A stretch of DNA of 64,000 nucleotides, from positions 13,826,001-13,890,000 of the forward strand of contig OZ281497.1 in NCBI GenBank assembly GCA_965637545.1, read 5' to 3'. The notes beneath the pieces are model-generated. The model ran no database searches. It saw nothing but the letters and a program-made list of their open reading frames with translations, and was not told the DNA's origin. This DNA comes from Phallusia mammillata. Taxonomy: Eukaryota. Shown piece by piece: positions 33,201 to 48,200 of this stretch (the stretch's first letter is position 1; each line of letters opens with the position of its first letter). The position numbers and the translations under genes were made by a program.

Positions 33201-36200
33201 TCATTGCCGATATTTTAATTGACAATATGTAGTTGCTTCTGAATGAAAATCCGAACAAAAATATTTTGTCTTTACAGAGTTGTGAATACTGGACTGAATG
33301 GAGCGAATGGAGCAGGTGCAGCCGACAATGTAACGGTGGTTTCCGTACACACATACGTACTTGTGTTAACGGTCTTCAAGGAGATAATGGATGTCAAGGT
33401 AGCAGCAGTGAACAAGAGGAGTGCAACTTTGTGGTAAGTAAAAATAGGAATACATAAACCGTTCATATCATATTGAAACAACTGTTTAGCTACTTAAACA
33501 TCTTTTATCTTTGCAGGACTGTCCGTTCTGGCAGAACTGGTCTAGTTGGACAAGTTGTACGGCTTCGTGTGGTGGAGGAACTCGCTCTCACAACAGAACG
33601 TGTGCTCTCGGCCAACCAGGGGATTTCGGATGTATCGGTCCAGTTTACGAAGAGCAATTCTGCGGTGGCGCGGTAAGTCATATACTATCAAACAGTATTT
33701 CATTTGTAAACACAAATCACTTTGACAGGCATGGTAGCCGTGCTAAGTAAATATCTCTACAGGTCTAAAGAAAACCTTAAGTTTGCACCGGGTCTGAATA
33801 TGCTTTCAGAATAATTTTGCCACATGATAATTTTTAGATGGCGACAATAATAAATTTATTCCAAATGTTTAGACATGTCCTAGCTGGTCATCTTGGAGTC
33901 GATGGAGTTTCTGCAGCAAGTCTTGCGAGTCTGGTGATAGAGTGAGAACGCGAAAATGCGTCGCAGGAAACATCGGTGACATCGGGTGCGAGGAAGGCGA
34001 TTTGTTCATAGAACCTTGCAACCTTCAGGTAAAGAAAATACACTGTACTTTGTAAAATTAAAGGCGACTATAAAAAGTAATTAAATAATACCCCGAAAGA
34101 ATATAAAGTTGTAAAGGTTAATCTTAGATACACTTCTTTTACTAAAGCAATTAAACTAAATAACAAAAACCCCTCGTTTTCATTCTTAGTTTTAGTAACC
34201 TTAACTGAACGTAATATTTTCCCACCAGCCGTGTCCAGCCTACCGTGACTGGAGCGAGTGGAGTTCTTGCTCGAAGACTTGTGGACGTGGATTACGTAGT
34301 CGATCGCGGTCGTGCTTTGCTGGTGACCTTCCTTCATTCTTCTGCTCTGGACTTAGTCGGGAAGAAGAGTTCTGCAACCAACAGGTCGGTAGACTGTCAA
34401 AAATAAAAGATTTTAAGTCTTTGGAGCGACATAACGTTTTGACAATCCTTATGTTATTCTCATATGAAATGTAAAACCCAAGGAAGTTAACCAGTAAAAA
34501 CAGCACAAGTTTTTCTGTAGCAATGTCCATTCTGGGATTTGTGGAGCCACTGGACTCCATGCGATATTACCTGCGGTCGTGGAACTTCCATCAGAACACG
34601 TCAGTGCGTAAACGGTGAAGTCAGCGAAATCGGATGTGTGGGTGACGTCACGGAGCAGCGAACTTGTATTCACGGAGTAAGTTTTATGTTTTGGTTTGAC
34701 AAAAAACATACAAAACGTAAAAACGCATTGAGTTCTCGTAACCTGGCGTTGAATGTTTTGCTGTGTGAGTGTTAATGAATATGTGAAAAAATGGCTAAAC
34801 TAAAAAGTAAAAGTAAAAAATAGAGTATTTCTATTAAGGCGTGTGTAGCTAAATTCGTATGTAAAAACGGCACAAACATACGATAAAGCAGAGATGTGAT
34901 TTCAGAACTGTCCATTCTGGACTGCATGGGACGATTGGGGACCGTGTGATAGGACTTGTGCAATTGGAAACCGTGTAAGATACAGGAAATGTATGAACGG
35001 CGGAGAAGGAGCAGTAACTGGATGTCAGGGTGGTGCAATGGAGAGAGGAGAATGCAACAATATTGTAAGTAAAGTATTTGAATTTATTTTCAAACTACAA
35101 AGGTATACTAAACTCGATTTTACACATCTAAATCCTAAATAAACAATGTTGTTATTAGTTGCGGAGTTCTTACGTGTTTCAGTTTCTTTGATTCAATAAG
35201 CAAACAAAATAAACATTACTTTTATGTAGCCTTGTCCGTTCTGGACTGATTACGGACCTCCTGGCTCTTGCTCTCATTCCTGTGGTGGTGGAACAGCAAG
35301 CCGCTCAAGAATTTGTGTAAATGGTGTTCCTGGTGAAGTTGGATGTTTGGGAAGTGAAGTGTTAGTGTCTCACTGCAACGTTCACGTAAGTTCTTGTTTG
35401 TCACCAGGGTTTAAATATTATTGCGATAAAGTTAACATAAACTAATCAGATTTATAATCCGTGTTCAGTCGCACTTCTCATTTAATTTGGATGAGATTCT
35501 AATCCAATCGTTGAAAGCGCAAACAGCTGCAGAATGTTTCAAACAATACACGGAAATTAATCGTTTGTAATGTTTTTGGGATTAGAAGGTGCTTTAAAAG
35601 TCAGCATCAGTTTAAAAGTCAACGAGACTTATTATAGTACTCCTAACAAACATGTTTCTATTTATTGCTCAGTTCGCCGTTTTTTCAAATTGATAAAATA
35701 TGAATTGTGCAAAAATGCCAACTTCAACTGTCTATATTTTCTGCCTGTTTTGATTTTTTTGTTTTTTGTAAAGACAATTGTGTTGAAGTGTTCGGATATT
35801 TAACTGACCGCTAATCCGTTTCTTCGCTGTTCAGACTTGTCCTTCGTGGTCTCGATGGGGAAGTTGGGGAAGCTGCGATGTGGTTTGTGGAGGTGGAAAC
35901 ATGAGAAGGTTCCGCGTATGTCTTTATGCACGGGACGGTGATGTTTGCTCTGGAAACAATGAAGAAATCGCTAGTTGTGGCGACGCGGTACGACATAATT
36001 TCGTGACATTGAACAATTTTTACAAACAGTACTTTTCAATTGCTTAACTCGTGTCCTGTAAATATTTGCAAATTAAAAACTTTAATACGGTTTTGTGATA
36101 AGACTGGTGATAACGCACTCAATCAATGGTGATGGTTAAACGTCACATCGAGGGACCTAGCTTCTACCAATTGAATCCAATCCTTTACTTTGTGTAAATT

Positions 36201-39200
36201 TTTTAAACAATAAAATTGGCATTATGCATAACTAATGCGTCAAGGTGTTGTAACAAAAATTGTGTTGGATTTAGACTTGCGCATCTTGGTCGTCTTGGGG
36301 ATCATGGAGTTCGTGTAGCAAGAGTTGTTCTGGTGGAACTCGAAGTCAACAGAGAGTCTGTGTTGGTGACGTCGGATCGTGTGACGGATCATACGAAAAC
36401 ACCGAAACTTGTAACACCGGAGTAAGTTTAAGATGAATGCACTAAAATACCTCATGTAAAATACCTCATGTTGAAAGAAAGTCTCAAGAGGCAAACAGAT
36501 TAAGTGTTTTTTCGGATATTGGAAGTTTTCAAAACATTAAAAAACGCACACATCGGGCCGTTGTGTTTAGCAGTAAAATTAATAAACTTGTTAATTACCA
36601 CGGCTGAAACTTTTCTCAAATATGTTTTGTTGAATATATAAAAAAATCAAAGTGTTTGAGCATATCTTGATCAAAGCTTCTAAGTATTTTATGTAATTAT
36701 CGACTTGTGTTTTACAAGCTACAATCGCCATTGTTTTAGAACTGTCCATCTTGGACGGACTGGACGTTGTGGACTGACTGTAGCAAGACCTGCGGAGTTG
36801 GCAAACAATCCCGACAACGTGGTTGTAACTTCGGTAACCCAGGACAACAAGGATGTATCGGCGATGTCAACGAAGAACAAAATTGCTTGGCTAAGGTGCG
36901 TGCGTTTCACCATTTTAATTGGAACCATTTCATATAAAACAGGATTGTACTTTTGTTTGCTGCCCTTGCAGTTTAAACTGTTATATGAATTATGTCAGCT
37001 GATCAAGATTACAGAGATTTCTTATGAATTTGATTAAAATAAACGAAATTTAAAAGAGACCCAACCGAAAATACATGTTACCCAACAAAATTGACGAAGG
37101 TCATAAAAATATTGGTCAATTTTCTTTTACTCTTGTTTCCCTTTGCACTGCATGCGGCTGCAATGTTTTTGAAACCGCCTTTTCTCAAGAAATGTTTACA
37201 ATTTTACGGTGACTTTCTAATCACAACCGATAATTACTTCGCGCGATCAAAACATTGATCAATAGCGCCCGCTCAATAAAGCCTGGGTTCTATGACCCAC
37301 GGCAATTTGCGAGCCAGTGTTGTGAAGGGATTTAGAAGGTTTAAAACTTCGCTTGTAAAAAAAACGGAAATATTTTTACTGTCCTTTGGAACTGTTTGTA
37401 ATGTTAGTATGTGCGCACTAGTTTAATCAGACCGCATCAGCAAACAGGTACATTCATCTGTACTTGCAAATGTAATTATTTTCGGCGTGTAATATACCTA
37501 CAAACTACAAACTTCAGCGCTTTTTAGGTGGATTTTCTGGTTACAACTCGTGAGCGTTTATACCTGCAATATTTGCGATTTTATACTCAGGTGTGTGCTT
37601 ACTGGGGAACCTGGGGTCCGTGGGCTCGTTGTACAGAGGCATGTGGCGTCGGAGTTCGAACTCACACACGAGAATGCATCAATGGTTCACCGGGAGATGT
37701 TGGATGTGAGGATAGCGATAGTGAAAGCACAAGTTGCGAGAATGCGGTGAGTGTCAAATGCCCTGTATTTTTGTTCGTGTAAAAATGACGGTAAATTTTT
37801 AGTTTGTATCCAGCCGTTTTTGCAACTGATGAGTTTATTCGTTGGTTTTTAGGGGTGACGCTTACTTAATATAAATTTTCAGTATGAATTCGACAAGTCG
37901 CTCGTTTTTTTATTTCGTAAATGCAATATTTGCGTTTTATAGATCGCCTTGCCATATTATTAACCTAACCACTTTTAACCTAAATTTAAAGGCAGTCGCA
38001 TTTTAACCGAGTATCACTGGAGAACACCATAATGTATTGTTGTTGGAGAGAGTAGTGAGCAAAAAAAGCCAGCTGATTGACTGTTATTTGTGTCTGTATA
38101 GCCTTGTAAAATCGAGTTTGAATGGTCACCATGGAGCAGTTGCACTAAGACTTGTGGCGTGGGAAAACGTTTCCGATCACGAGTGTGTGGAGGACCTCGC
38201 TCTGCTGAATGTGAAGATCTACCAGGACAAGAGGAAGTTTGCAACATCGTGGTATGCCCTGTTGAATAGAATTTTTCTTCTCTTCAAAATCAAATTAAAA
38301 TTGAACATTCCAACCCCTGTAATTTTAAAACTTTCTTTCGTTAAAAAACGGTTTTTCTGTGCCTAAATTTACCTTTTAACATACTAACCTTGTTTCTGTT
38401 TTGCAGTAACGCATTTAATGCTTGGATCTTACACTTGTGTTCTTCTATTCCATTGGAAAGAAGTTCCAACTAACATTTTCTCTTCATTAACCTTTACAAT
38501 ACAACGTTTGTTGTAGCACTAACAAGCTTTGTTTTACAGGATTTAAACACTAACCTTGTATTTTGATATGTGACATAATTGTATTAGTGCAAAAATCTTA
38601 ATCATATTTTTTACTATTTTAACTTGTTTTTTGTTTGTTTGTTAATTTTAACTGTATTTACTAACCATATTAACCCTTTTCTCCTTCTCTTCTTTTTTAC
38701 ACTTTCTTGCAGGTTAATTAACCCAATTTCAGATTAAACTATTTTTTGGTAGTTACCAATCAGTAAAATAAAAACACCTTTTTATTTGTTTTTTGATGAT
38801 ATGTTTACTATGTTTAATCTTTGACTAATTTCATTACTCTTAACCACACTAACCAAATCTTCTTTCCCAATAACCAAGATGTTTTTTCTTTGTTGTTTGA
38901 ATATGTTTTGCTTTTGAATACTTGTTGTTTGTTATTTGCTTTTAACATTTTGTAACGATAAGTTAATAACTAACTTATTATACTAACCACTAACCCTTTT
39001 TTCCTTTAACCAACTACTAACGTGTTTTTTTAATTAAGTAATTACCAATACTCCAATTAACTAATAAAGTGTGTTTAACCTAAAGTAACTCTCGTATATA
39101 AATTTTCTTATTTTTGGATTAATTGTTAAATTTAAATGCAAAACGTAGCACTTGAAAAAACTTACTCAACAATCAATTTGCAACACAGAGTTGCCCGTCG

Positions 39201-42200
39201 TGGACGCAGTGGTCGTCATGGAGCAGATGCAGTCGAACTTGTGGTGGTGGAGAAAGTTCCAGAAACCGTGTTTGCACCAACGGGGAAATCGGAGACATCG
39301 GATGCGGCGGAGAGGCGGCAGAATATAGAAACTGCAGCCAAAGCGTAAGTTCTATCAACGAAAAATAATGTTTGCATTAAAAAAAAATATTCTTGATGTC
39401 TACAAAATAATAGATGCACAGTAAATCTTTGGCCGAATTGGCGTAGTATAACTAAGATCCAACCTTCCTTGCATACTGCTTGGAGATAACGCTATAATAT
39501 ACTTCCATGTTTTTTGCAAATATTTTGTGATTAAGTTTGCTTACTATTCTCCTTTGGTGTTGTGTCGATTTTGGCCCTTCTAATTACTGTTTTTGTTTTT
39601 TTGTTACAAACTTAACATTGCATCACAAATTGTATTTGTAGGTCTGCCCATCATGGACTACCTGGTCTTCTTGGGGAGATTGTAGCGCCACATGTGGTGT
39701 CGGTTATTACTCGAGACAGCGATCTTGTCAGAACGGCATGATCGGCGACATTGGATGTAACGATGTTGCGAGTGAAAGGGATTCGTGCGGAAGTCTGGTA
39801 ATTATTAAAAACAAATTGTTTGAGAACAACATACGGCTACTTGACTTGAAACTATATGTATATTTAAAGTGTACATTTTATATCAATTACACGTGCATAC
39901 TTTATCATACAACACAAGTCTTGTACATTGTTATACACACTGTATTTTTATTTAGTGGTTTGCTGTATATCAACTTTAAAGCTTTTACATCCTTGTTTAC
40001 AAGCGCCTGCGTTACTGCCTTTGAATTTAACCCAACTATTTGATTAACAGTTGGATCGTTGTCCGACCTGGGCCGAATGGGGATCGTGGAGTCAGTGCAC
40101 AAAGACATGTGCGGGTGGTGACAGAACTCATGTTCGTATTTGTTTGAATGGAAATGTTGGTGATATCGGATGTGATACTGGAGAGCAAGAAACAGAAGCT
40201 TGCAACTCGATGGTAAGTAAACATATTTTTAGACAACTTTGATGTTTTTTTAAAGAATATGTTTTTTCGGCTAATTCACGAGGCAACCGATTTTTGAAAC
40301 CAATTTTGTGGGCTGTATGGAAACCCTTTATCGCTTTATGTAAATGAAAAGTTTTGTTGTCTACCTTTTTTCAATTGTCGTTAACTTTCAGGTTTGTCCT
40401 ACTTGGACACCATGGTCAAGTTGGTCTGCATGTTCACTCACCTGTGGTTCCGGCTCGCGCTACAGAACTCGCGGATGCCAGGGTGGCAAGTTTGGTGAAG
40501 TCGGTTGTGACGGCGATATCCGAATTGACGAAAACTGTAACGTTCAGGTACAAAATATAAGTAAATTAAAAACCGTAAATTTGTGCTAACATTTGTTTAC
40601 TTTTAAACAACAACCATTTAGCGTATTTTTTTCACGTCAGATCTTTACGAATATATATGTATCTCTTATCAGACCTTATACTATGTTAACTTTTACAAAG
40701 CCACTTATCTGATGATTTTTTTTGTAGAACTGCCCGACTTGGTCTGCGTGGGGTGCGTGGAGCGATTGTAGCAAAACGTGTGGTGAGGGCATTTACTCTC
40801 ATGAAAGAGAATGTATTAACGGTCAAGTTGGTGATCTTGGATGTGACGGACCCACGGTGGTCGAAAATGTTTGTCAAGTGAAGGTATGGTGCCATTTTGA
40901 TTTCTTTTGTTTCTTTTGAAGTTAATATTTTTTTTGCCATCCAAGTAAAAATGTAAGCGCTATTTGAATGTCAATAACATGTAAAAACGCATAATAAACA
41001 AATTTCTAATCATTCGTATTTATCAACACATTTCCGTTTTGGGGGCATTACGTAGTATTTTTGCACTTTTTACGCATATACGTGAGTTTTTGGCATATTT
41101 TTAAAGTTATATATGTTCTTTGTGTAGTACAGTATTACATACACCACGTCCACGCTCGTATTTTCGTTAAATTTTTGGCATATTTTGTGTGTAGCCGTGT
41201 GCGTATTGGTCACAATGGAGTGAATATGGCAAGTGCACGAGAACATGCGGTGGTGGTCTTAAGAGCAGGGAGAGACTTTGTGTGAATGGACAAGCTGGTG
41301 ATGAAGGTTGTGAGGGATTACTAGATGAATCTGTCACCTGCGCATCAATGGTAAATAACACCGAATCAATTACATGTTACAAAATATAACATTTGATGTT
41401 GGCTATTGCACAAGTTTTCCACATACATTACATACAACTTGTGATTTAGCTTTGCCCGGTCTGGGGACCTTGGTCATCTTGGGAAGAATGTACTCGCTCA
41501 TGCGGAGGGGGAACCACCCAGAGAACTCGATCATGCGAGAACGGAGTTCAAGGACAGATCGGTTGTGAAGGATACGTGCTCGATTCACAATCTTGTGGAA
41601 CTGAAGTAAGTTGAAATAAGAGGCATGATTTTCAACCGTAAACTTGTTATTCAAAATCACTTTTTCAAAAATCTTGCATTTCTTGTTTATGCTCCTTTTG
41701 AGTATAGATGGTTGTACCAAGTAAAGAGTTAAAGCCGCTGTATGTTGAGTGTGTTAGAATTGTCTGACGTTAGTGCAAAATGATTAACTTTGCAATTTTT
41801 ACCCGAACAGCAATGCGCCACTTGGACAAGCTGGGATGAATGGTCGTCTTGCACACTCACATGTGGGGGTGGTTCACAAAAGAGATCACGTGAGTGCTCG
41901 GGTGGTGATGAAGCCGAAGAATGTTTGGGACCAGCGGAAATGACCAGAGGATGTAACTACCTGGTAAATAATCTGCTTGCGATTGTACTACCTCTTAAAA
42001 TATATCATTGATTAATTCCTATTCTAACTTTTACAACTAGTCGTGTCCTCACTGGTCTCCATGGTCGCGAGCTGATTCATGCAGTAAATCATGTGGCGGC
42101 GGACAAAGACGTGAAAGCAGAAGTTGCTTTGATGGTGAAGTCGGTGATATTGGATGTGATGGAGACGCTGAACGCTTTGTGGATTGTAACAGCCAGACTT

Positions 42201-45200
42201 GCCCAACCTGGTCGTCGTGGGGCAATTACACCAGCTGCTCGCGTTCATGCGGTGGAGGCGTCAGAAAACGACTCCGTACCTGCATTGGTGGTATAGCCGG
42301 CGTAGATGGATGTGAAGGAAGCACACAAGATCAAGTTGTCTGCCAATCTCAGGTAAATTTAAACAACCACATAAAACTCTAGGCTACACAGGATACTTTT
42401 AGTTTGGCTTTTCCATATCATAGGACCATTGTCTATTTTATTCTATATTTAACTTTTAAATTTTGAAATGTGTCACAGGAATGCCCATACTGGACAGCAT
42501 GGAGTGAATTCGGACCATGCAGTAAAACGTGCGGTGTTGCTTTGCACAAACACACTCGTACTTGTGTGAATGGCGAACCTGGAGTGCATGGCTGCGAAGG
42601 GAGCGATGAGGAAAGCGGAGTCTGTAATCTCGGAGTAAGTACTGTTTTTTTTTCTAATTTAATTAAATTCTCGTGGAAAGAACAACACCAGAGCCCGCCG
42701 TCGTCGTGTCTCTTTGTAGTTTCGTTTGGTGAATAATCTCTATAAAATTAATTTACTTTAACCCACCAAGTTTGGGTTGGCTAAAGCAATTCCGCTTAAG
42801 AATCTTGCTCTGGAGGCCAAGATAGGATTATAAACCAGAACACGCTTATCCCTTTTTTTGCTTTTTATTTGAAAGTTTTATGTACGATGACCCAAACGAT
42901 TTAAGCCGTACCTATTTGTAATACTGTTACAACTTTAAATTGTTTTTTGGTAACTTTCAAATATTTTTTGTAATCGCAGAATTGTCCACGTTTCGAACCA
43001 TGGGGATCATGGTCGCCGTGCAGCCGCACATGCGGGGGTGGTAGAACTGAACGAACGCGTTCTTGTATTGATGGGGAGATCGGAGATATTGGATGCGATG
43101 GCCCTGGCTCGGAAGAAATTGATTGTAGCCTAAGGGTAAGAGACCAAAGCGTATTGCAACTAGAAGTCATTTTATTAGCTAACGGGGTTTTAGTAGCTTA
43201 AAAAAACACAACAGTGTTTTTCTGGTTGGCCTAAGCTAATACGTTAACCATTGAGAAAATGGTTGATTCATAGTTTTAAGTGAGTTTTTAACCTAATCAC
43301 ACATTGACCAAATAAAAATATTTCAGGAATGTCCATTCTGGGGTCCATGGGGATCATGGAGTTCGTGTCCAATAACTTGTGGGTTCGGTAGAGTCACTCG
43401 ATCACGTGATTGTACTAATGGTGGAATTGATGGATCTGGTTGTGAAGGTTTCCCGGTAGAAGAACAATCGTGTGCCGAATCGGTATGTGGTGCAGAAAAA
43501 AGTCTCTTTGAAACATCTTAAATATTTAGTCAACACTGGTATTATAAGATTTAATTCAGTAAATTGCGTTCGAAAACCGATTTTGAGGTTAATTGTGTTA
43601 TGCGGTTTACTCAGAGTTAAAAGGAATTGTTTTGGTTTAGTTTTGTAATTAAGTACACTTTGCCTATTTAGGTTTGTCCCACGTGGAACAACTGGTCGGA
43701 ATGGGGAGGATGTGACGTCACATGTGGTGGAGGAAGACGCGGACGAAGTAGAACTTGTCAAAACGGCGAGGTTGGTCAGATTGGATGTGAAGGTGCAAGC
43801 AGCGAACGACAAGGCTGCAACGAACAAGTAAGTTAAAAAAATGTAATAAATATTCGTTAAAAAGAATTAGGTATTAAGTATAAATTGTTGGAGTTTGTTT
43901 ATATTCTAACGACTTGTTGCTACACAAACGCTGGTGAAACTTAAACATAGACTAAAATAAAGTTTGGTTGGACTTCACAATTCGGGCAATAGCTTCCAGA
44001 AAAACAAATGCTTTACTAAACTGATTTGTAAAAACTTTGTTGCGAAAACAAAAGATTAATACGGAGGCAATGCATACATTTAATATTCTACTATTCGTTT
44101 GCAGCAATGTCCATCGTGGGTAACATGGTCGTCATGGAGTCAATGTTCACATACTTGCGGAGGTGGAACTTACTCTAGAACTCGTTCCTGCTTGTTCGGA
44201 GAGGCTGGTCAAATCGGATGTCTTGGATTCACGCAGGAACTTGCCAATTGCCAAACCAACGTAAGTAAACTTGGTTCATTTTCTGTTCAAATGAAATCAA
44301 AAACAAAGCAAATATTTTACACGTGATAACCGCCATGTTTTTACCTTGCTAAAAATGCTTTTTGTGCGAATGCATGACTTGGTTTCAAAAAGAACTTTCT
44401 AACGCAAGGATCTACAAACCAACAGCAGAAAATGGTATTGAGTCAAAATCTTTTAAAATCACTGTTGAAATTTGAAATTTTGACGTGACTTTTTGTTTGT
44501 AGGATTGTCCATCGTGGTCAGTGTGGGCTAGCTGGACAGATTGTAGCAAAACTTGCGGTAGTGGATCTCGTTCACGATCCCGAAATTGTCAGGTCGGATC
44601 AAATCTCGTGTTAGGGTGTGAGGGAGCCAACGAACAAGTTGAAAATTGTCAAACTCAGGTAAGAATTTAAGTAAAATCGTAATTTTGTCCCCATTTGTAT
44701 GTCGCCTTTTAAATATTTCAAATTTCAAATAAAGATTTTTTTGTCTAATTTACCTTCAAAAAGTGTAATAAAACTTAAACTACAACGACAAACTTTTCAG
44801 ACTTGCCCAAGCTGGACGAGCTGGGGTCAGTGGGAAAGTTGTGATGCTGAATGTGGTGGAGGAACTCAAACAAGAAGAAGATTCTGTGACAATGGAGTTC
44901 CTGGTGACAGAGGTTGCACCGATTTGCCTACAGATTCGATTTCTTGCAATGAACAGGTACCTAAAAATGTTTATTTTTGTCGACTTAAGTTTTCCAAATA
45001 TAAATAAGCAAGATCTATTTCTAACTGTTTTTTTAAAAAAGCTCTACATTACAATTAAAAGGTGTCAACCACAAAATCTAATTGTTAACCCACAAATTTA
45101 AAATTTATACTACTGCTTTCGCTTTGGACATTTACATTGTCACACATCTAGCACAAGTGAACAAATGTCTCATTGTACACACCTTTAGATTTTAAATTGC

Positions 45201-48200
45201 CAATCAACTAACAGAATTATTGTTTATCCAACAGCCTTGCTCTCAATGGTCATCTTGGGGACAATGGGGACAATGTTCTAAAACATGTGGAGGTGGACAG
45301 CAAAGTCGTGAACGAATTTGTTTGAATGGAAATGCAGGCGACGCTGGTTGTCCTGGTTCCGCCCGAGTAACACAGATTTGTAGCGGGCAATCATGTCCTG
45401 GTAAGCATTTACTTTCACCACAACTTTTTTTTACGTTGTTTTATTTACTGATGTGTCTTCGTTTCTTATTTTTTATAATCATTTACTTTTGTGTCGTTGA
45501 ACAGTGTGCTTTAGGCAGAAACGTTATGTTATAATCTATTGTCCTGGTTAAATTTTGGCTATTTGCACTCTTAATCGACAAAAACACCTTGACAAATTTG
45601 TGCTTTATGTGATGTATTGTTTTAAACAAACATTGAACGTGTGATCCCCATTTAATATTGTTGTGATTTTCAGTATGTTCACCCAACTACGAGGATGTTG
45701 GAATGGAATCAGGTTTCGTTGTGTGCAGTGACGGTGTTGAAATCGGATCAGTTTGCACGTTCAACTGCAGAGCTGGATATCAGATTGTCGGCATGTCCAA
45801 CCTTGTATGTGAATCAGTTGCAGGTGTAGCTGCGTGGAGCAATTTACCACCAACCTGCTCAAGTAAGTTTCAAATCTTAAGTTATCTCAATTTTGTTCAT
45901 TTTTGCCGTGGCGATAAGGTTCAGTGGAGGATTTTGTAGGATTAAAACATTATTTTTTCTTTGCAGAGAAATGCAGTGACCAGGTGGACGTAGTGTTTGT
46001 CCTGGACAGCTCGTCTAGTATCAGAGCTGTCAATTTCCAGGTGGTGCGAAAGTTCTTGACCAGCCTCGTTGAGAGGTTTAACGTCGGCCCAGAAGATGCA
46101 TTGGTAAGACACCCAACTTCCTAAAATAAAAAAACAACATTTACAACAAACAGTTGTGGCAAACATATTACTTTTGGCGAAACAAAAATTGCGTTCAGTA
46201 AGAGTTAATTTGCAACTTTTGCGCAGTTTGGAGCGATTCGTTACAATAATCTCATCGACCGTCTGTGGGATCTCAACGCTTTCACCAACAAGGCCGGAGT
46301 GTTGCAGGCCATCCAACGTATTCCATACGATGGTTTCGGAACTTTAACCGGAAACGCTATAAACTACACACAACAGTTTATGTTTACCGAATCTACCGGT
46401 CGAAGAAGTGGAGTCCCGAAAATCGTAGTGGTCATCACTGATGGTAAGTCGTCTAAACAGCTTTATGTGCTCGAATAAAAATAATAGTGTTGACAATTTC
46501 GTATGTACGCGATTTGCCGATACGATAACAGGCTAACAAATTGGGAATCGTATGAATATGTCCCTCTTTTGGACTAATTTTGGGGGGTGACAGTATTTTT
46601 TTCATAATATACTACTATTTTGTGCAATGTACGAAAATAAATACCAAATTCCCTTTTTTGCCAAATTCGTTCTCCAATATACTTATTCTAATTAAAATTT
46701 GTTCTTTACACTTTAGGTATCTCGTTTGACGACGTCCAAGTACCTTCGCTACTGCTGAAGGCTGACAACACGCTGGTGGTGGCTGTTGGTATTGGTAATG
46801 TTGACATTACACAAATCAACGAGATTGCTTCCGATCCAGACGCAGACTTTGCCACGACTGTGGACGATTTCAACTCTCTCACCAAAGTGGTGAACAGCAT
46901 CACAAACCAGATTAAACTCTGTCAGGTACATGTTTTAAAAAAAAAACTTTGTTAAAACTGTATTCTTGTTGTGTTTTTTTTTTAATTACACGGTGGAGTT
47001 ACGTATGTTTAATACGAACCTGCTCCAAACTCCGTTAAAGTTTGGGGTTGGGGATCAGTTGTTATATACTAACCAAATTACGTAAAAAATACTAAAATGA
47101 CATGTTGCAAATTTGAGACAACTAAAAAGCACGCCGCAATTAATCATTTTTACTTCTATTTTCCAGGGTATTGTCAACGTTACGGATTGTCCGTCCGAAC
47201 CGGTGATGGATGTTGTGTTCGTTGTGGACAGCTCCTCTAGTATTGGGGCAGCAAACTTTGAACTTATGAGACAATTTATCACCAACCTTATCGAAGTTTT
47301 TACCGTTTCACCTTCGACTACACAGGTAAAAAATATTGTAAAAATATGTTGAATTACGTTTAGTGGCATTATGTTGCTCTTTATAATAGAAATATATGAG
47401 GTCTGATAGCAAAAGAAAAAAGTTTAACGAAAATGTTGTGTAAAAGTCAAGTTTTAAAATCATGACTATTTGGATGCGTTAACTGGATAGCGCAAGTTCA
47501 CGACAGTATGTGGGTTTACGTCAACATTTTATTTAAATCTTGTTGGTGATTCAAATACCAGTCATAGGTTACAATTAAAACAACCGTGATGTTTTTATGT
47601 CATCTGGCTTTTGGTAACATCTACCTTTACTTGCTTTCAGGTCGGGTTCTTAAGATACAATAGAGACGTTGATCCCATTTTTGAACTCAACACGCACACC
47701 ACCACGGAAAGTGTTATTACTGGTAGGTGTATTTTATATGTGCGTAAAATAACTAGAAGGGATTCACAATAACCTCGATCTAACCTTTTCACAGCCGTAA
47801 ACGGTATTGTTTATTCGGGATCTGGCACAAGAACCGGACAAGCTTTGTCGTATGCATCGACTAATTCTTTCCGGGCTTTCAACGGACGTCGACCTGGAGT
47901 ACCTGCTGTTGCTATTGTGATTACTGACGGTAAGAATTATTGTGTATAGTACAGTAATTAATGGTACAGTTTAATTTGGGTTATGAATTTGGTTGGCTGA
48001 AATTAAGTATTTTTTTTGCTGCGCTAACTTCATTTTTGTCTGGTAATATCCTAGTTTGGCCAAATCTGCCTACCAATGCTCGATCGGGGTTTAGTTGATT
48101 TTATTTCGCTCGAAGAACAGAAGCATAATAGTAAAAAATATACACATTAGCCGTAAATAGCTGTGCACTATAAGCCTACGAAGCACAAATGATGACAGTC

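What the first reader, a model, noticed from the sequence alone, without database searches (positions are those of the whole stretch)
38383..39065. Intron 94 is packed with ACTAAC (Quaking/STAR, branch-point) elements, unlike the other TSR introns
Seen: 10 ACTAAC plus 2 ACTAAT in about 690 nt, with many TAAC half-sites and U-rich tracts. From base composition alone well under one ACTAAC would be expected (rough estimate), and I saw no comparable cluster in the other introns of the array. Established: ACUAAY with a nearby UAAY is the QKI/HOW/GLD-1 (STAR family) response element and the SF1 branch-point motif; QKI controls tissue-specific splicing, 3'UTR regulation and circRNA formation. Inference: this is the regulatory hub of the giant gene, a tissue-specific switch at the TSR94/95 boundary.
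Basis: partly seen in the sequence, partly recalled or inferred. Interest (0 to 1): 0.76.

Follow-up and report, generated by a model that had tools for sequence, protein, structure and literature searches.

The report
Branch-point-motif cluster in an unspliced transcript tail
A real, very dense cluster of ACTAAC motifs (the sites read by Quaking-type RNA-binding proteins and by the branch-point factor SF1) lies in a stretch that the available RNA data show is not cut out as an intron. It stays attached as a tail behind a stop codon, at the exact point where a giant repeat gene splits into two kinds of transcript.

Summary
There are 10 ACTAAC and 2 ACTAAT on the sense strand in 38383-39065, against 0.14 ACTAAC expected from the 84 other inter-exon gaps of the array (P about 6e-16). 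ACTAAC is the most enriched hexamer in an unbiased test. No repeat or mobile element explains it.

The "intron 94" label does not hold in the RNA seen. Assembled RNA contigs from three studies cut out every neighbouring intron, but none joins 38251 to 39189. Spliced upstream exons instead run unbroken from exon 94 into this stretch, as far as 39212 in two runs. There is an in-frame stop five codons in, and AATAAA at 38767 and 39063. All 12 motifs lie between the stop and the distal AATAAA.

Exon 95 is joined to a different thrombospondin (TSR) exon that is absent from the 64-kb window.

So the cluster sits in the unspliced 3' tail (a 3'UTR or a retained intron) of an upstream-array transcript, at a true transcript boundary. 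The likely mechanism is that a STAR protein (Quaking orthologue) or SF1 occupies the array. This is inferred and was not tested. Conservation could not be tested either.

The parts
38102..38251 (+). TSR exon 94 ([14 protein letters not shown]...CNIV)
   Evidence: Pfam TSP_1, E 2.4e-11. RNA joint 37745->38101 in three runs.
38252..38257 (+). Donor-like GTATGC at the canonical TSR exon boundary; no use of it is seen in the RNA contigs
   Evidence: No joint starts at 38251 in 4 runs. Its leave-one-out PWM score of 4.3 bits ranks 8th from the bottom of 78 exons.
38267..38269 (+). In-frame TAG stop, five codons after exon 94 (...CNIVVCPVE*)
   Evidence: Translation of the exon frame.
38383..39065 (+). 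Cluster of 10 ACTAAC (38383, 38469, 38518, 38549, 38660, 38848, 38969, 38982, 38989, 39016) and 2 ACTAAT (38824, 39060). Four are full TACTAAC boxes, and 10 of 12 have a TAAY half-site within 20 nt.
   Evidence: The motifs are predicted to be mostly unpaired (0.69 vs 0.50 for the rest of the stretch).
38370..38406 (+). 3' splice-site-like module 1: TACTAAC + pyrimidine tract + CAG, followed at once by TAA
   Evidence: Sequence. Acceptor PWM score 7.7 bits, close to the array median. No RNA joint here.
38518..38539 (+). 3' splice-site-like module 2: ACTAAC + TTTGTTTTACAG
   Evidence: Sequence. No RNA joint here.
38660..38712 (+). 3' splice-site-like module 3: ACTAAC + long CT-rich tract + TGCAG, with a stop two codons later
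   Evidence: Sequence. Acceptor PWM score 9.6 bits. No RNA joint here.
38767..38772 (+). Proximal AATAAA, followed by a T/GT-rich tract
   Evidence: and the sequence. Its use as a poly(A) signal is not shown.
39063..39068 (+). Distal AATAAA, overlapping the last ACTAAT and followed by GTGTGTTT. No ACTAAY lies between here and exon 95.
   Evidence: Its use as a poly(A) signal is not shown.
38252..39188 (+). The whole stretch kept in RNA. It is G-poor (9.8% G), T-rich and weakly folded.
   Evidence: Contigs X25 record 4 (11,887 nt, otherwise fully spliced) and X6 record 7 cover 38101-39212 without a break. X14 record 2 covers 38101-38590. Runs of study P4 hold 100% of the stretch's sampled words, P5 66-72% and P6 17-27%.
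39164..39188 (+). Weak acceptor of exon 95 (poor pyrimidine tract, ...caatttgcaacacag)
   Evidence: Leave-one-out PWM score of 1.7 bits ranks 3rd from the bottom of 78. It is nevertheless used, by another upstream exon.
39189..39344 (+). TSR exon 95. In the RNA it follows a TSR-exon end '...GSEVNSTDCNTQ' that is not in the window.
   Evidence: Loose end at 39183 in X6, X10 and X14. X14 record 3 carries 2.4 kb upstream of the joint. The 30-mer is absent from the window on both strands at up to 3 mismatches. Pfam TSP_1.

Best explanation
What is shown:
- 38252-39188 is transcribed on the sense strand, continuous with the spliced exons up to exon 94.
- It is not removed in the dominant RNA form.
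- It opens with a stop codon after five codons.
- It holds two AATAAA signals, and all twelve ACTAAY motifs lie between the stop and the second signal.
- Exon 95 and the exons after it belong, in the abundant RNA, to a transcript that enters from a TSR exon outside the window.

What is inferred:
- The stretch is the 3' tail of a rarer 'upstream-array' transcript that ends with TSR 94. This would be a composite terminal exon whose 3'UTR has tandem poly(A) signals, with some read-through into exon 95.
- The G-poor, weakly folded ACUAAC/UAAY array is a single-stranded landing platform for a STAR-family protein (the animal's Quaking orthologue), in competition with SF1.
- Occupancy would do two things. 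First, it would mask the consensus branch points, so that the weak exon-94 donor is spliced neither to the three strong internal acceptors nor to exon 95. Tandem ACUAAC elements are reported to silence branch-point use in this way. Second, it would set the stability, translation or localisation of the truncated isoform, as STAR sites do in other 3'UTRs.
For: - The cluster is statistically real and unique in the array.
- The runs are RNA. Ten neighbouring introns are removed at GT..AG, and intron-only bins have zero depth. No 38251->39189 joint appears in 4 runs from 3 studies, while contigs pass from exon 94 into the stretch without a branch.
- Word shares fall from the 5' end: P6 17-27%, P5 66-72%, P4 100%. 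This pattern hints at 3' ends lying inside the stretch.
- There is an in-frame stop at 38267 and AATAAA at 38767 and 39063. The motifs are confined to 38383-39065.
- The flanking donor and acceptor are among the weakest of 78.
- No decayed TSR exon lies inside the stretch (nhmmer, with a positive control).
- Predicted structure is low and the motifs are predicted unpaired.
- Ten of 12 motifs fit the bipartite QKI element.
- Literature: SF1 and QKI compete for ACUAA branch points, and tandem ACUAAC give high-affinity QKI binding and splicing repression (PMC11483029, abstract). Ci-quaking is expressed in ascidian notochord and muscle (PMC3034685).
Against: - There is no evidence that any protein binds here.
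- Contigs cannot show RNA ends, levels or strand, so no poly(A) site is demonstrated.
- In two runs the contig continues past the distal AATAAA into exon 95. That fits intron retention at least as well as termination.
- The assembler may have dropped a minor 94->95 isoform.
- The exon-94 donor sits exactly at the canonical TSR exon boundary, as expected of a true intron.
- One motif is lost by a C>T polymorphism in one strain.
- Conservation in other species could not be examined.
- The identification of the animal as an ascidian comes from earlier notes of this scan and was not tested here.
Confidence: 0.5

Rival explanations
1. It is a regulated (detained) intron, essentially the first reader's idea. 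The stretch is a true intron of one giant gene. It stays unspliced in the sampled material and is removed (94->95) only in some cells. The ACUAAC array would be the switch: QKI bound means splicing is blocked, and SF1 bound means it is allowed.
For: - The donor lies at the canonical phase-0 TSR boundary.
- Contigs in X25 and X6 run through the whole stretch into exon 95, past both AATAAA.
- Both splice sites are weak, as is typical of retained introns.
- QKI/SF1 competition at tandem ACUAAC is published (PMC11483029).
Against: - No 94->95 joint appears in any of 4 runs from 3 studies.
- Exon 95 has another upstream partner, which dominates.
- Coverage of the stretch appears to stop early in studies P5 and P6 (X14 contig ends at 38590). 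A uniformly retained intron would not predict that.
Confidence: 0.25
2. The motifs are working branch points of three stacked internal acceptors (38406, 38539, 38712). These would create alternative terminal exons that stop at once.
For: Three motifs are followed by pyrimidine tracts and CAG at 17-47 nt. Modules 1 and 3 score at or above the array median as acceptors, and stops follow within 0-8 codons.
Against: No joint ends at any of these acceptors in four RNA runs, and the contigs pass straight through them. The other seven ACTAAC and the two ACTAAT have no acceptor behind them.
Confidence: 0.08
3. The cluster is a neutral by-product. Local duplication and compositional drift in a G-poor, T-rich non-coding stretch happened to multiply a TAAC-containing word, and it has no function.
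For: One ~47-nt internal duplication is significant (score 44 vs null maximum 38). One motif is polymorphic. No conservation data exist.
Against: Composition-matched shuffles never exceed 5 copies in 5000 trials. Apart from the one 47-nt pair, the flanks of the motifs are unrelated, so most copies arose independently. There is no tandem array.
Confidence: 0.12
4. The repeated word is a target site for something else, for example a microRNA whose seed pairs with ACUAAC(C), or another RNA-binding protein.
For: Six of the ten sites share the 7-mer ACTAACC. The stretch behaves like a 3'UTR.
Against: No matching small RNA was identified. A text search for the complementary word returned only tRNA and Y-RNA fragments. 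The TAAY half-sites and the TACTAAC extension fit STAR/SF1 better than a seed match.
Confidence: 0.05

Closest known systems
Quaking response element (bipartite NACUAAY + UAAY) and related STAR sites (GLD-1, HOW) in 3'UTRs
   Same: It has the same core word and the same half-site spacing (10 of 12). It lies in single-stranded, transcribed, non-coding RNA behind a stop codon.
   Different: Twelve cores in about 680 nt is far denser than the one or two sites of typical targets. Binding is untested. It is uncertain whether the stretch is a 3'UTR or a retained intron.
Tandem ACUAAC branch-point elements repressed by QKI in competition with SF1 (RAI14 intron 10; PMC11483029)
   Same: Consensus branch-point boxes occur in multiple copies next to splice sites that are not used. 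Pairs lie only 7-31 nt apart (38982/38989, 38518/38549, 38824/38848).
   Different: The published case has two elements just upstream of a cassette exon. Here a dozen are spread over an entire unspliced stretch, and the outcome is a transcript end or boundary rather than exon skipping.
Internal alternative terminal exons of giant repeat genes (for example the titin Novex-3 exon; recalled from memory)
   Same: A repeat-domain exon in the middle of a giant array continues into a stop codon and a tail, giving a truncated isoform beside the isoform that goes on.
   Different: Here the ongoing isoform does not contain the preceding 94 exons of the window at all. No poly(A) site has been mapped.
Yeast-type UACUAAC branch-point box read by SF1/BBP
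   Same: Four perfect TACTAAC boxes are present, and three motifs have a pyrimidine tract and AG at textbook distance.
   Different: No splicing to those AGs is seen. The other 84 inter-exon gaps of the same gene hold only 4 ACTAAC among them, so most of its introns do not use this box.

Membership tests
Quaking/STAR response element cluster | Core NACUAAY present on the transcribed strand | tested here: met
   12 cores on the + strand and none on the - strand. The sense strand is continuous with spliced exons in the RNA contigs.
Quaking/STAR response element cluster | UAAY half-site within 1-20 nt of the core | tested here: met
   10 of 12 cores.
Quaking/STAR response element cluster | Present in stable RNA, not removed with an intron | tested here: met
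   Contigs from three studies keep the stretch or its 5' part while all neighbouring introns are removed.
Quaking/STAR response element cluster | A STAR protein of the organism binds it and changes the RNA's fate | not testable with these tools
   Literature shows only that an ascidian quaking gene exists and is expressed in notochord and muscle (PMC3034685).
Quaking/STAR response element cluster | Conservation of the sites in related species | tested here: inconclusive
   No orthologous DNA could be reached. One site is polymorphic within the species.
Functional intron branch points | Lies 15-50 nt upstream of a 3' splice site that is used | tested here: not met
   Only 3 of 10 have a pyrimidine tract and AG behind them, and none of those AGs is a joint in four RNA runs. 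The last ACTAAC is 172 nt from the used acceptor at 39188, with several AGs in between.
Ordinary constitutive intron of the TSR array | Removed from mature RNA at GT..AG like its neighbours | tested here: not met
   Ten neighbouring introns give joints and this one gives none. A rare spliced form cannot be excluded from contigs.
Composite terminal exon / intronic polyadenylation | Exon reads on past an unused donor into an in-frame stop | tested here: met
Composite terminal exon / intronic polyadenylation | Poly(A) signal with mapped cleavage sites and a drop of coverage behind it | tested here: inconclusive
   AATAAA at 38767 and 39063, and word shares decline from the 5' end. Against this, contigs cannot show RNA ends, and two runs read through to 39212.
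Retained / detained intron | Both flanking exons on the same molecule as the intron | tested here: inconclusive
   Contigs reach only 24 nt into exon 95, where the assembly graph branches.
Repeat or mobile element | Tandem units or further copies elsewhere | tested here: not met
   No tandem array and no other copy in the 64 kb. There is only one 47-nt internal pair. The rest of the genome was not searchable.

The most novel reading that the evidence does not exclude
The ACUAAC array is a STAR-protein-operated gate in a giant extracellular-matrix gene. Where the Quaking orthologue is present, it blankets a dozen consensus branch points. The exon-94 donor then stays unspliced and the upstream 94-TSR block ends here as its own product. 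Where the orthologue is absent, SF1 takes the sites and the block is spliced onward to exon 95. One locus would then yield either two separate proteins or one protein of more than 110 TSRs.
Probability: 0.15. Interest if true: 0.7.

Novelty: new member of a known kind. Interest (0 to 1): 0.5.

Why it matters
If the array is a working STAR/SF1 platform, it would be one of the densest natural clusters of such sites. It sits at a decision point (end the transcript, or go on) in a giant repeat gene of an invertebrate chordate in which quaking is a notochord and muscle gene. That makes the published idea of branch-point competition between QKI and SF1 directly testable in a simple embryo.

Apart from the mechanism, the RNA evidence corrects the gene model. 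The '112-TSR gene' is read out as at least two transcript classes that meet at this stretch. The abundant class reaches exon 95 from an exon more than 38.9 kb away or placed elsewhere in the assembly.

Tried and rejected
- **Chance or composition:** rejected by shuffles and by comparison with the other introns.
- **Tandem repeat, mobile element or second copy in the window:** none found. One 47-nt internal duplication only.
- **Decayed TSR exons, whose old intron ends might have piled up:** an nhmmer profile of the exons finds nothing in the stretch. It does find two real exons in a control gap.
- **Known RNA families:** no Rfam match at E up to 1 in 37800-39600.
- **Recursive splice sites:** no AG|GTRAG in the stretch.
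- **Distant branch points for exon 95:** unlikely, because several AGs lie between the last motif and 39188.
- **Genomic-DNA contamination as the source of the retained stretch:** rejected, because intron-only bins nearby have zero depth in the same runs.
- **Spliced-leader trans-splicing at the internal acceptors:** no loose ends there.
- **Looking for orthologous or other-haplotype DNA:** two exact-protein look-ups found nothing. The metagenome scan gave only generic TSR exons at 33-52% identity. The word-based protein search with exon 94 found no candidate in its length range. A by-sequence look-up of the outside partner exon in the scan's notes was blank.
- **Literature search for the gene itself:** gave nothing specific.
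- **The large representative-protein search:** not used, as the operators advised.

Full report
**1. The observation**

The window has no N and is 38% G+C. On the + strand, ACTAAC starts at 38383, 38469, 38518, 38549, 38660, 38848, 38969, 38982, 38989 and 39016, and ACTAAT at 38824 and 39060. The rest of the 64 kb holds 12 further + strand copies. Both strands together hold 42, which is no more than a shuffle of the whole window gives. The excess is therefore purely local and strand-specific.

I called 86 TSR exons by a simple rule and used the 84 other gaps between them (30.5 kb) as background.
- They hold 4 ACTAAC, never more than one per gap, which gives an expectation of 0.14 for this stretch (P about 6e-16).
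- In an unbiased comparison of all k-mers, ACTAAC is the most enriched hexamer.
- ACTAACC (6 vs 0.02) and TACTAAC (4 vs 0.02) are the most enriched heptamers, TAACC the top pentamer and TAAC the top tetramer (26 vs 5.4).
- The stretch has only 9.8% G, against 16-22% in the other gaps. Even so, 5000 dinucleotide-preserving shuffles of the stretch itself gave a mean of 0.77 and a maximum of 5.
- Ten of the twelve cores have a TAAY within 20 nt.

**2. What it is not**

- It is not a tandem repeat.
- No other copy exists in the window.
- It has no Rfam family.
- It holds no decayed TSR exon. An nhmmer profile of the exons found nothing here, but recovered two real exons that my caller had missed in a control gap.
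- The only significant internal similarity is a pair of about 47 nt, 38640-38686 / 38961-39006 (score 44, null maximum 38). This explains at most two or three motifs. Elsewhere the motifs have unrelated flanks.

**3. The RNA evidence changes the anatomy**

Public runs of the same coded organism hold the stretch. Four of them, from three studies, were laid on 36100-41900. They are RNA. Ten neighbouring introns are skipped at GT..AG, and intron-only bins have zero depth. That also rules out genomic DNA as the source of what follows.

No run has a joint from 38251 to 39189.
- An otherwise fully spliced 11,887-nt contig (X25 record 4) carries exons 36274-36421, 36740-36893 and 37589-37745. It then covers 38101-39212 without a break.
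- X6 record 7 does the same.
- X14 record 2 runs 38101-38590.
- The word index agrees. Runs of study P4 hold 100% of the sampled words of 38260-39180, P5 66-72% and P6 17-27%. The shares for the larger stretch 37400-40700 are what exons plus this one 'intron' would give.

Reading on from exon 94, the frame stops after five codons (…[12 protein letters not shown] at 38267). AATAAA occurs at 38767, followed by a T/GT-rich tract. It occurs again at 39063, overlapping the last ACTAAT and followed by GTGTGTTT. All twelve motifs lie between the stop and the second AATAAA.

**4. Exon 95 belongs to something else**

The contigs with exons 95 onward are separate from those above. In X6, X10 and X14 they continue upstream of 39183 with '...GGATCGGAAGTCAACAGCACCGACTGCAAT'. 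Together with the next six bases this reads GSEVNSTDCNTQ, a typical TSR exon end. X14 record 3 has 2.4 kb upstream of that joint.

That 30-mer is nowhere in the window on either strand, even with three mismatches. The other loose ends (39228, 40156, 36296) are short local matches of contigs that belong to other TSR exons and mean nothing here.

The downstream contigs carry 5- to 45-fold higher contig depth than the upstream ones. The tool warns that contig depth is a poor measure, so I take this only as a hint that the two classes are regulated apart.

The single '112-TSR gene' model is therefore not what is expressed. A rarer transcript contains the window's exons up to 94 and keeps this stretch. 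An abundant transcript reaches exon 95 from an exon at least 38.9 kb upstream or misplaced in the assembly.

**5. Splice signals**

In leave-one-out weight matrices built from 78 TSR exons:
- The exon-94 donor (GTG|GTATGC) ranks 8th from the bottom.
- The exon-95 acceptor, which has almost no pyrimidine tract, ranks 3rd from the bottom.

Inside the stretch, three motifs head textbook 3' splice-site modules ending at 38406, 38539 and 38712. Modules 1 and 3 score at or above the array median. No RNA joint uses any of them.

So strong branch-point, pyrimidine-tract and AG modules lie unused 150-460 nt behind a donor. The abundant transcript also bypasses them in favour of a much weaker acceptor. 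Active masking of these sites would explain that behaviour.

**6. Mechanism**

ACUAAY with a nearby UAAY is the bipartite Quaking element, and UACUAAC is the SF1/BBP box (established knowledge). A recent study reports that SF1 and QKI compete for ACUAA branch points. It also reports that tandem ACUAAC elements give high-affinity QKI binding that prevents either from serving as a branch point (PMC11483029, abstract).

Earlier notes of this scan take the genome for a sea squirt (I did not test this). Ascidian quaking is expressed in notochord and muscle (PMC3034685).

The stretch is predicted to fold weakly: -0.135 kcal/mol per nt, against -0.18 to -0.25 in six other introns. The motifs are predicted to be mostly unpaired, 0.69 against 0.50. 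That suits a platform for single-strand binders.

My best reading (confidence 0.5) is that the stretch is the 3' tail of the upstream-array transcript. The array would be occupied by a STAR protein, in competition with SF1. This would keep the stretch unspliced and govern the fate of that RNA.

Contigs cannot separate the two readings. They show neither RNA ends nor rare isoforms. In two runs they read through both AATAAA into exon 95, while in other studies coverage seems to stop earlier.

Lesser rivals are:
- working branch points of alternative terminal exons (0.08; no joints seen);
- neutral drift (0.12; one motif is lost by C>T at 38550 in X14);
- another trans-factor, such as a microRNA (0.05; one search gave no lead).

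**7. What could not be done**

Conservation could not be tested. Exact-protein look-ups, a metagenome scan and the word-based protein search reached no orthologous or other-haplotype DNA. The partner exon of exon 95 could not be located.

**8. Verdict**

- It is a new member of a known kind (a cluster of STAR/SF1-type sites in an unspliced transcript tail), remarkable for its density and for its position at a transcript boundary in a giant gene.
- Interest 0.5.

Noticed in passing
window 39183-39344 and beyond the window: In RNA contigs from three studies, exon 95 is spliced to a TSR-exon end (...GSEVNSTDCNTQ) that is absent from the whole 64-kb window. One contig carries 2.4 kb upstream of that joint. 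The abundant transcript therefore skips, or never contains, the window's 94 upstream TSR exons. The partner lies more than 38.9 kb away or the assembly is wrong here.
   Followed up: partly
window 37420-37588: A contig of run X6 starts inside the intron before exon 37589 and keeps 169 nt of it. That run therefore contains some unspliced precursor of the upstream transcript.
   Followed up: no
window 38248, 38257, 38550: Run X14 (another strain or individual) shows C>T at these three places. The one at 38550 turns the fourth ACTAAC into ATTAAC.
   Followed up: no
window 35835-35980 and 36274-36421: Two real TSR exons lie in what my simple exon caller treated as one long gap. They were found by the nhmmer exon profile, and the second was confirmed by RNA joints.
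   Followed up: partly
window 42041-42352: A single exon encodes two TSRs with no intron between them (...CNSQ TCPTW...). This is an exception to the one-TSR-per-exon rule of the array.
   Followed up: no
window 45703-45939 and 47113-47352: Downstream of the last TSR exon lie exons with a Sushi domain (E 9e-8) and the start of a VWA domain (E 7e-11). On the + strand these form the C-terminal part of the abundant transcript, not a 'head'.
   Followed up: partly
window 39164-39188: The acceptor of exon 95 has almost no pyrimidine tract and ranks 3rd weakest of 78. It is nonetheless the one used by the abundant transcript, across a very long distance.
   Followed up: partly
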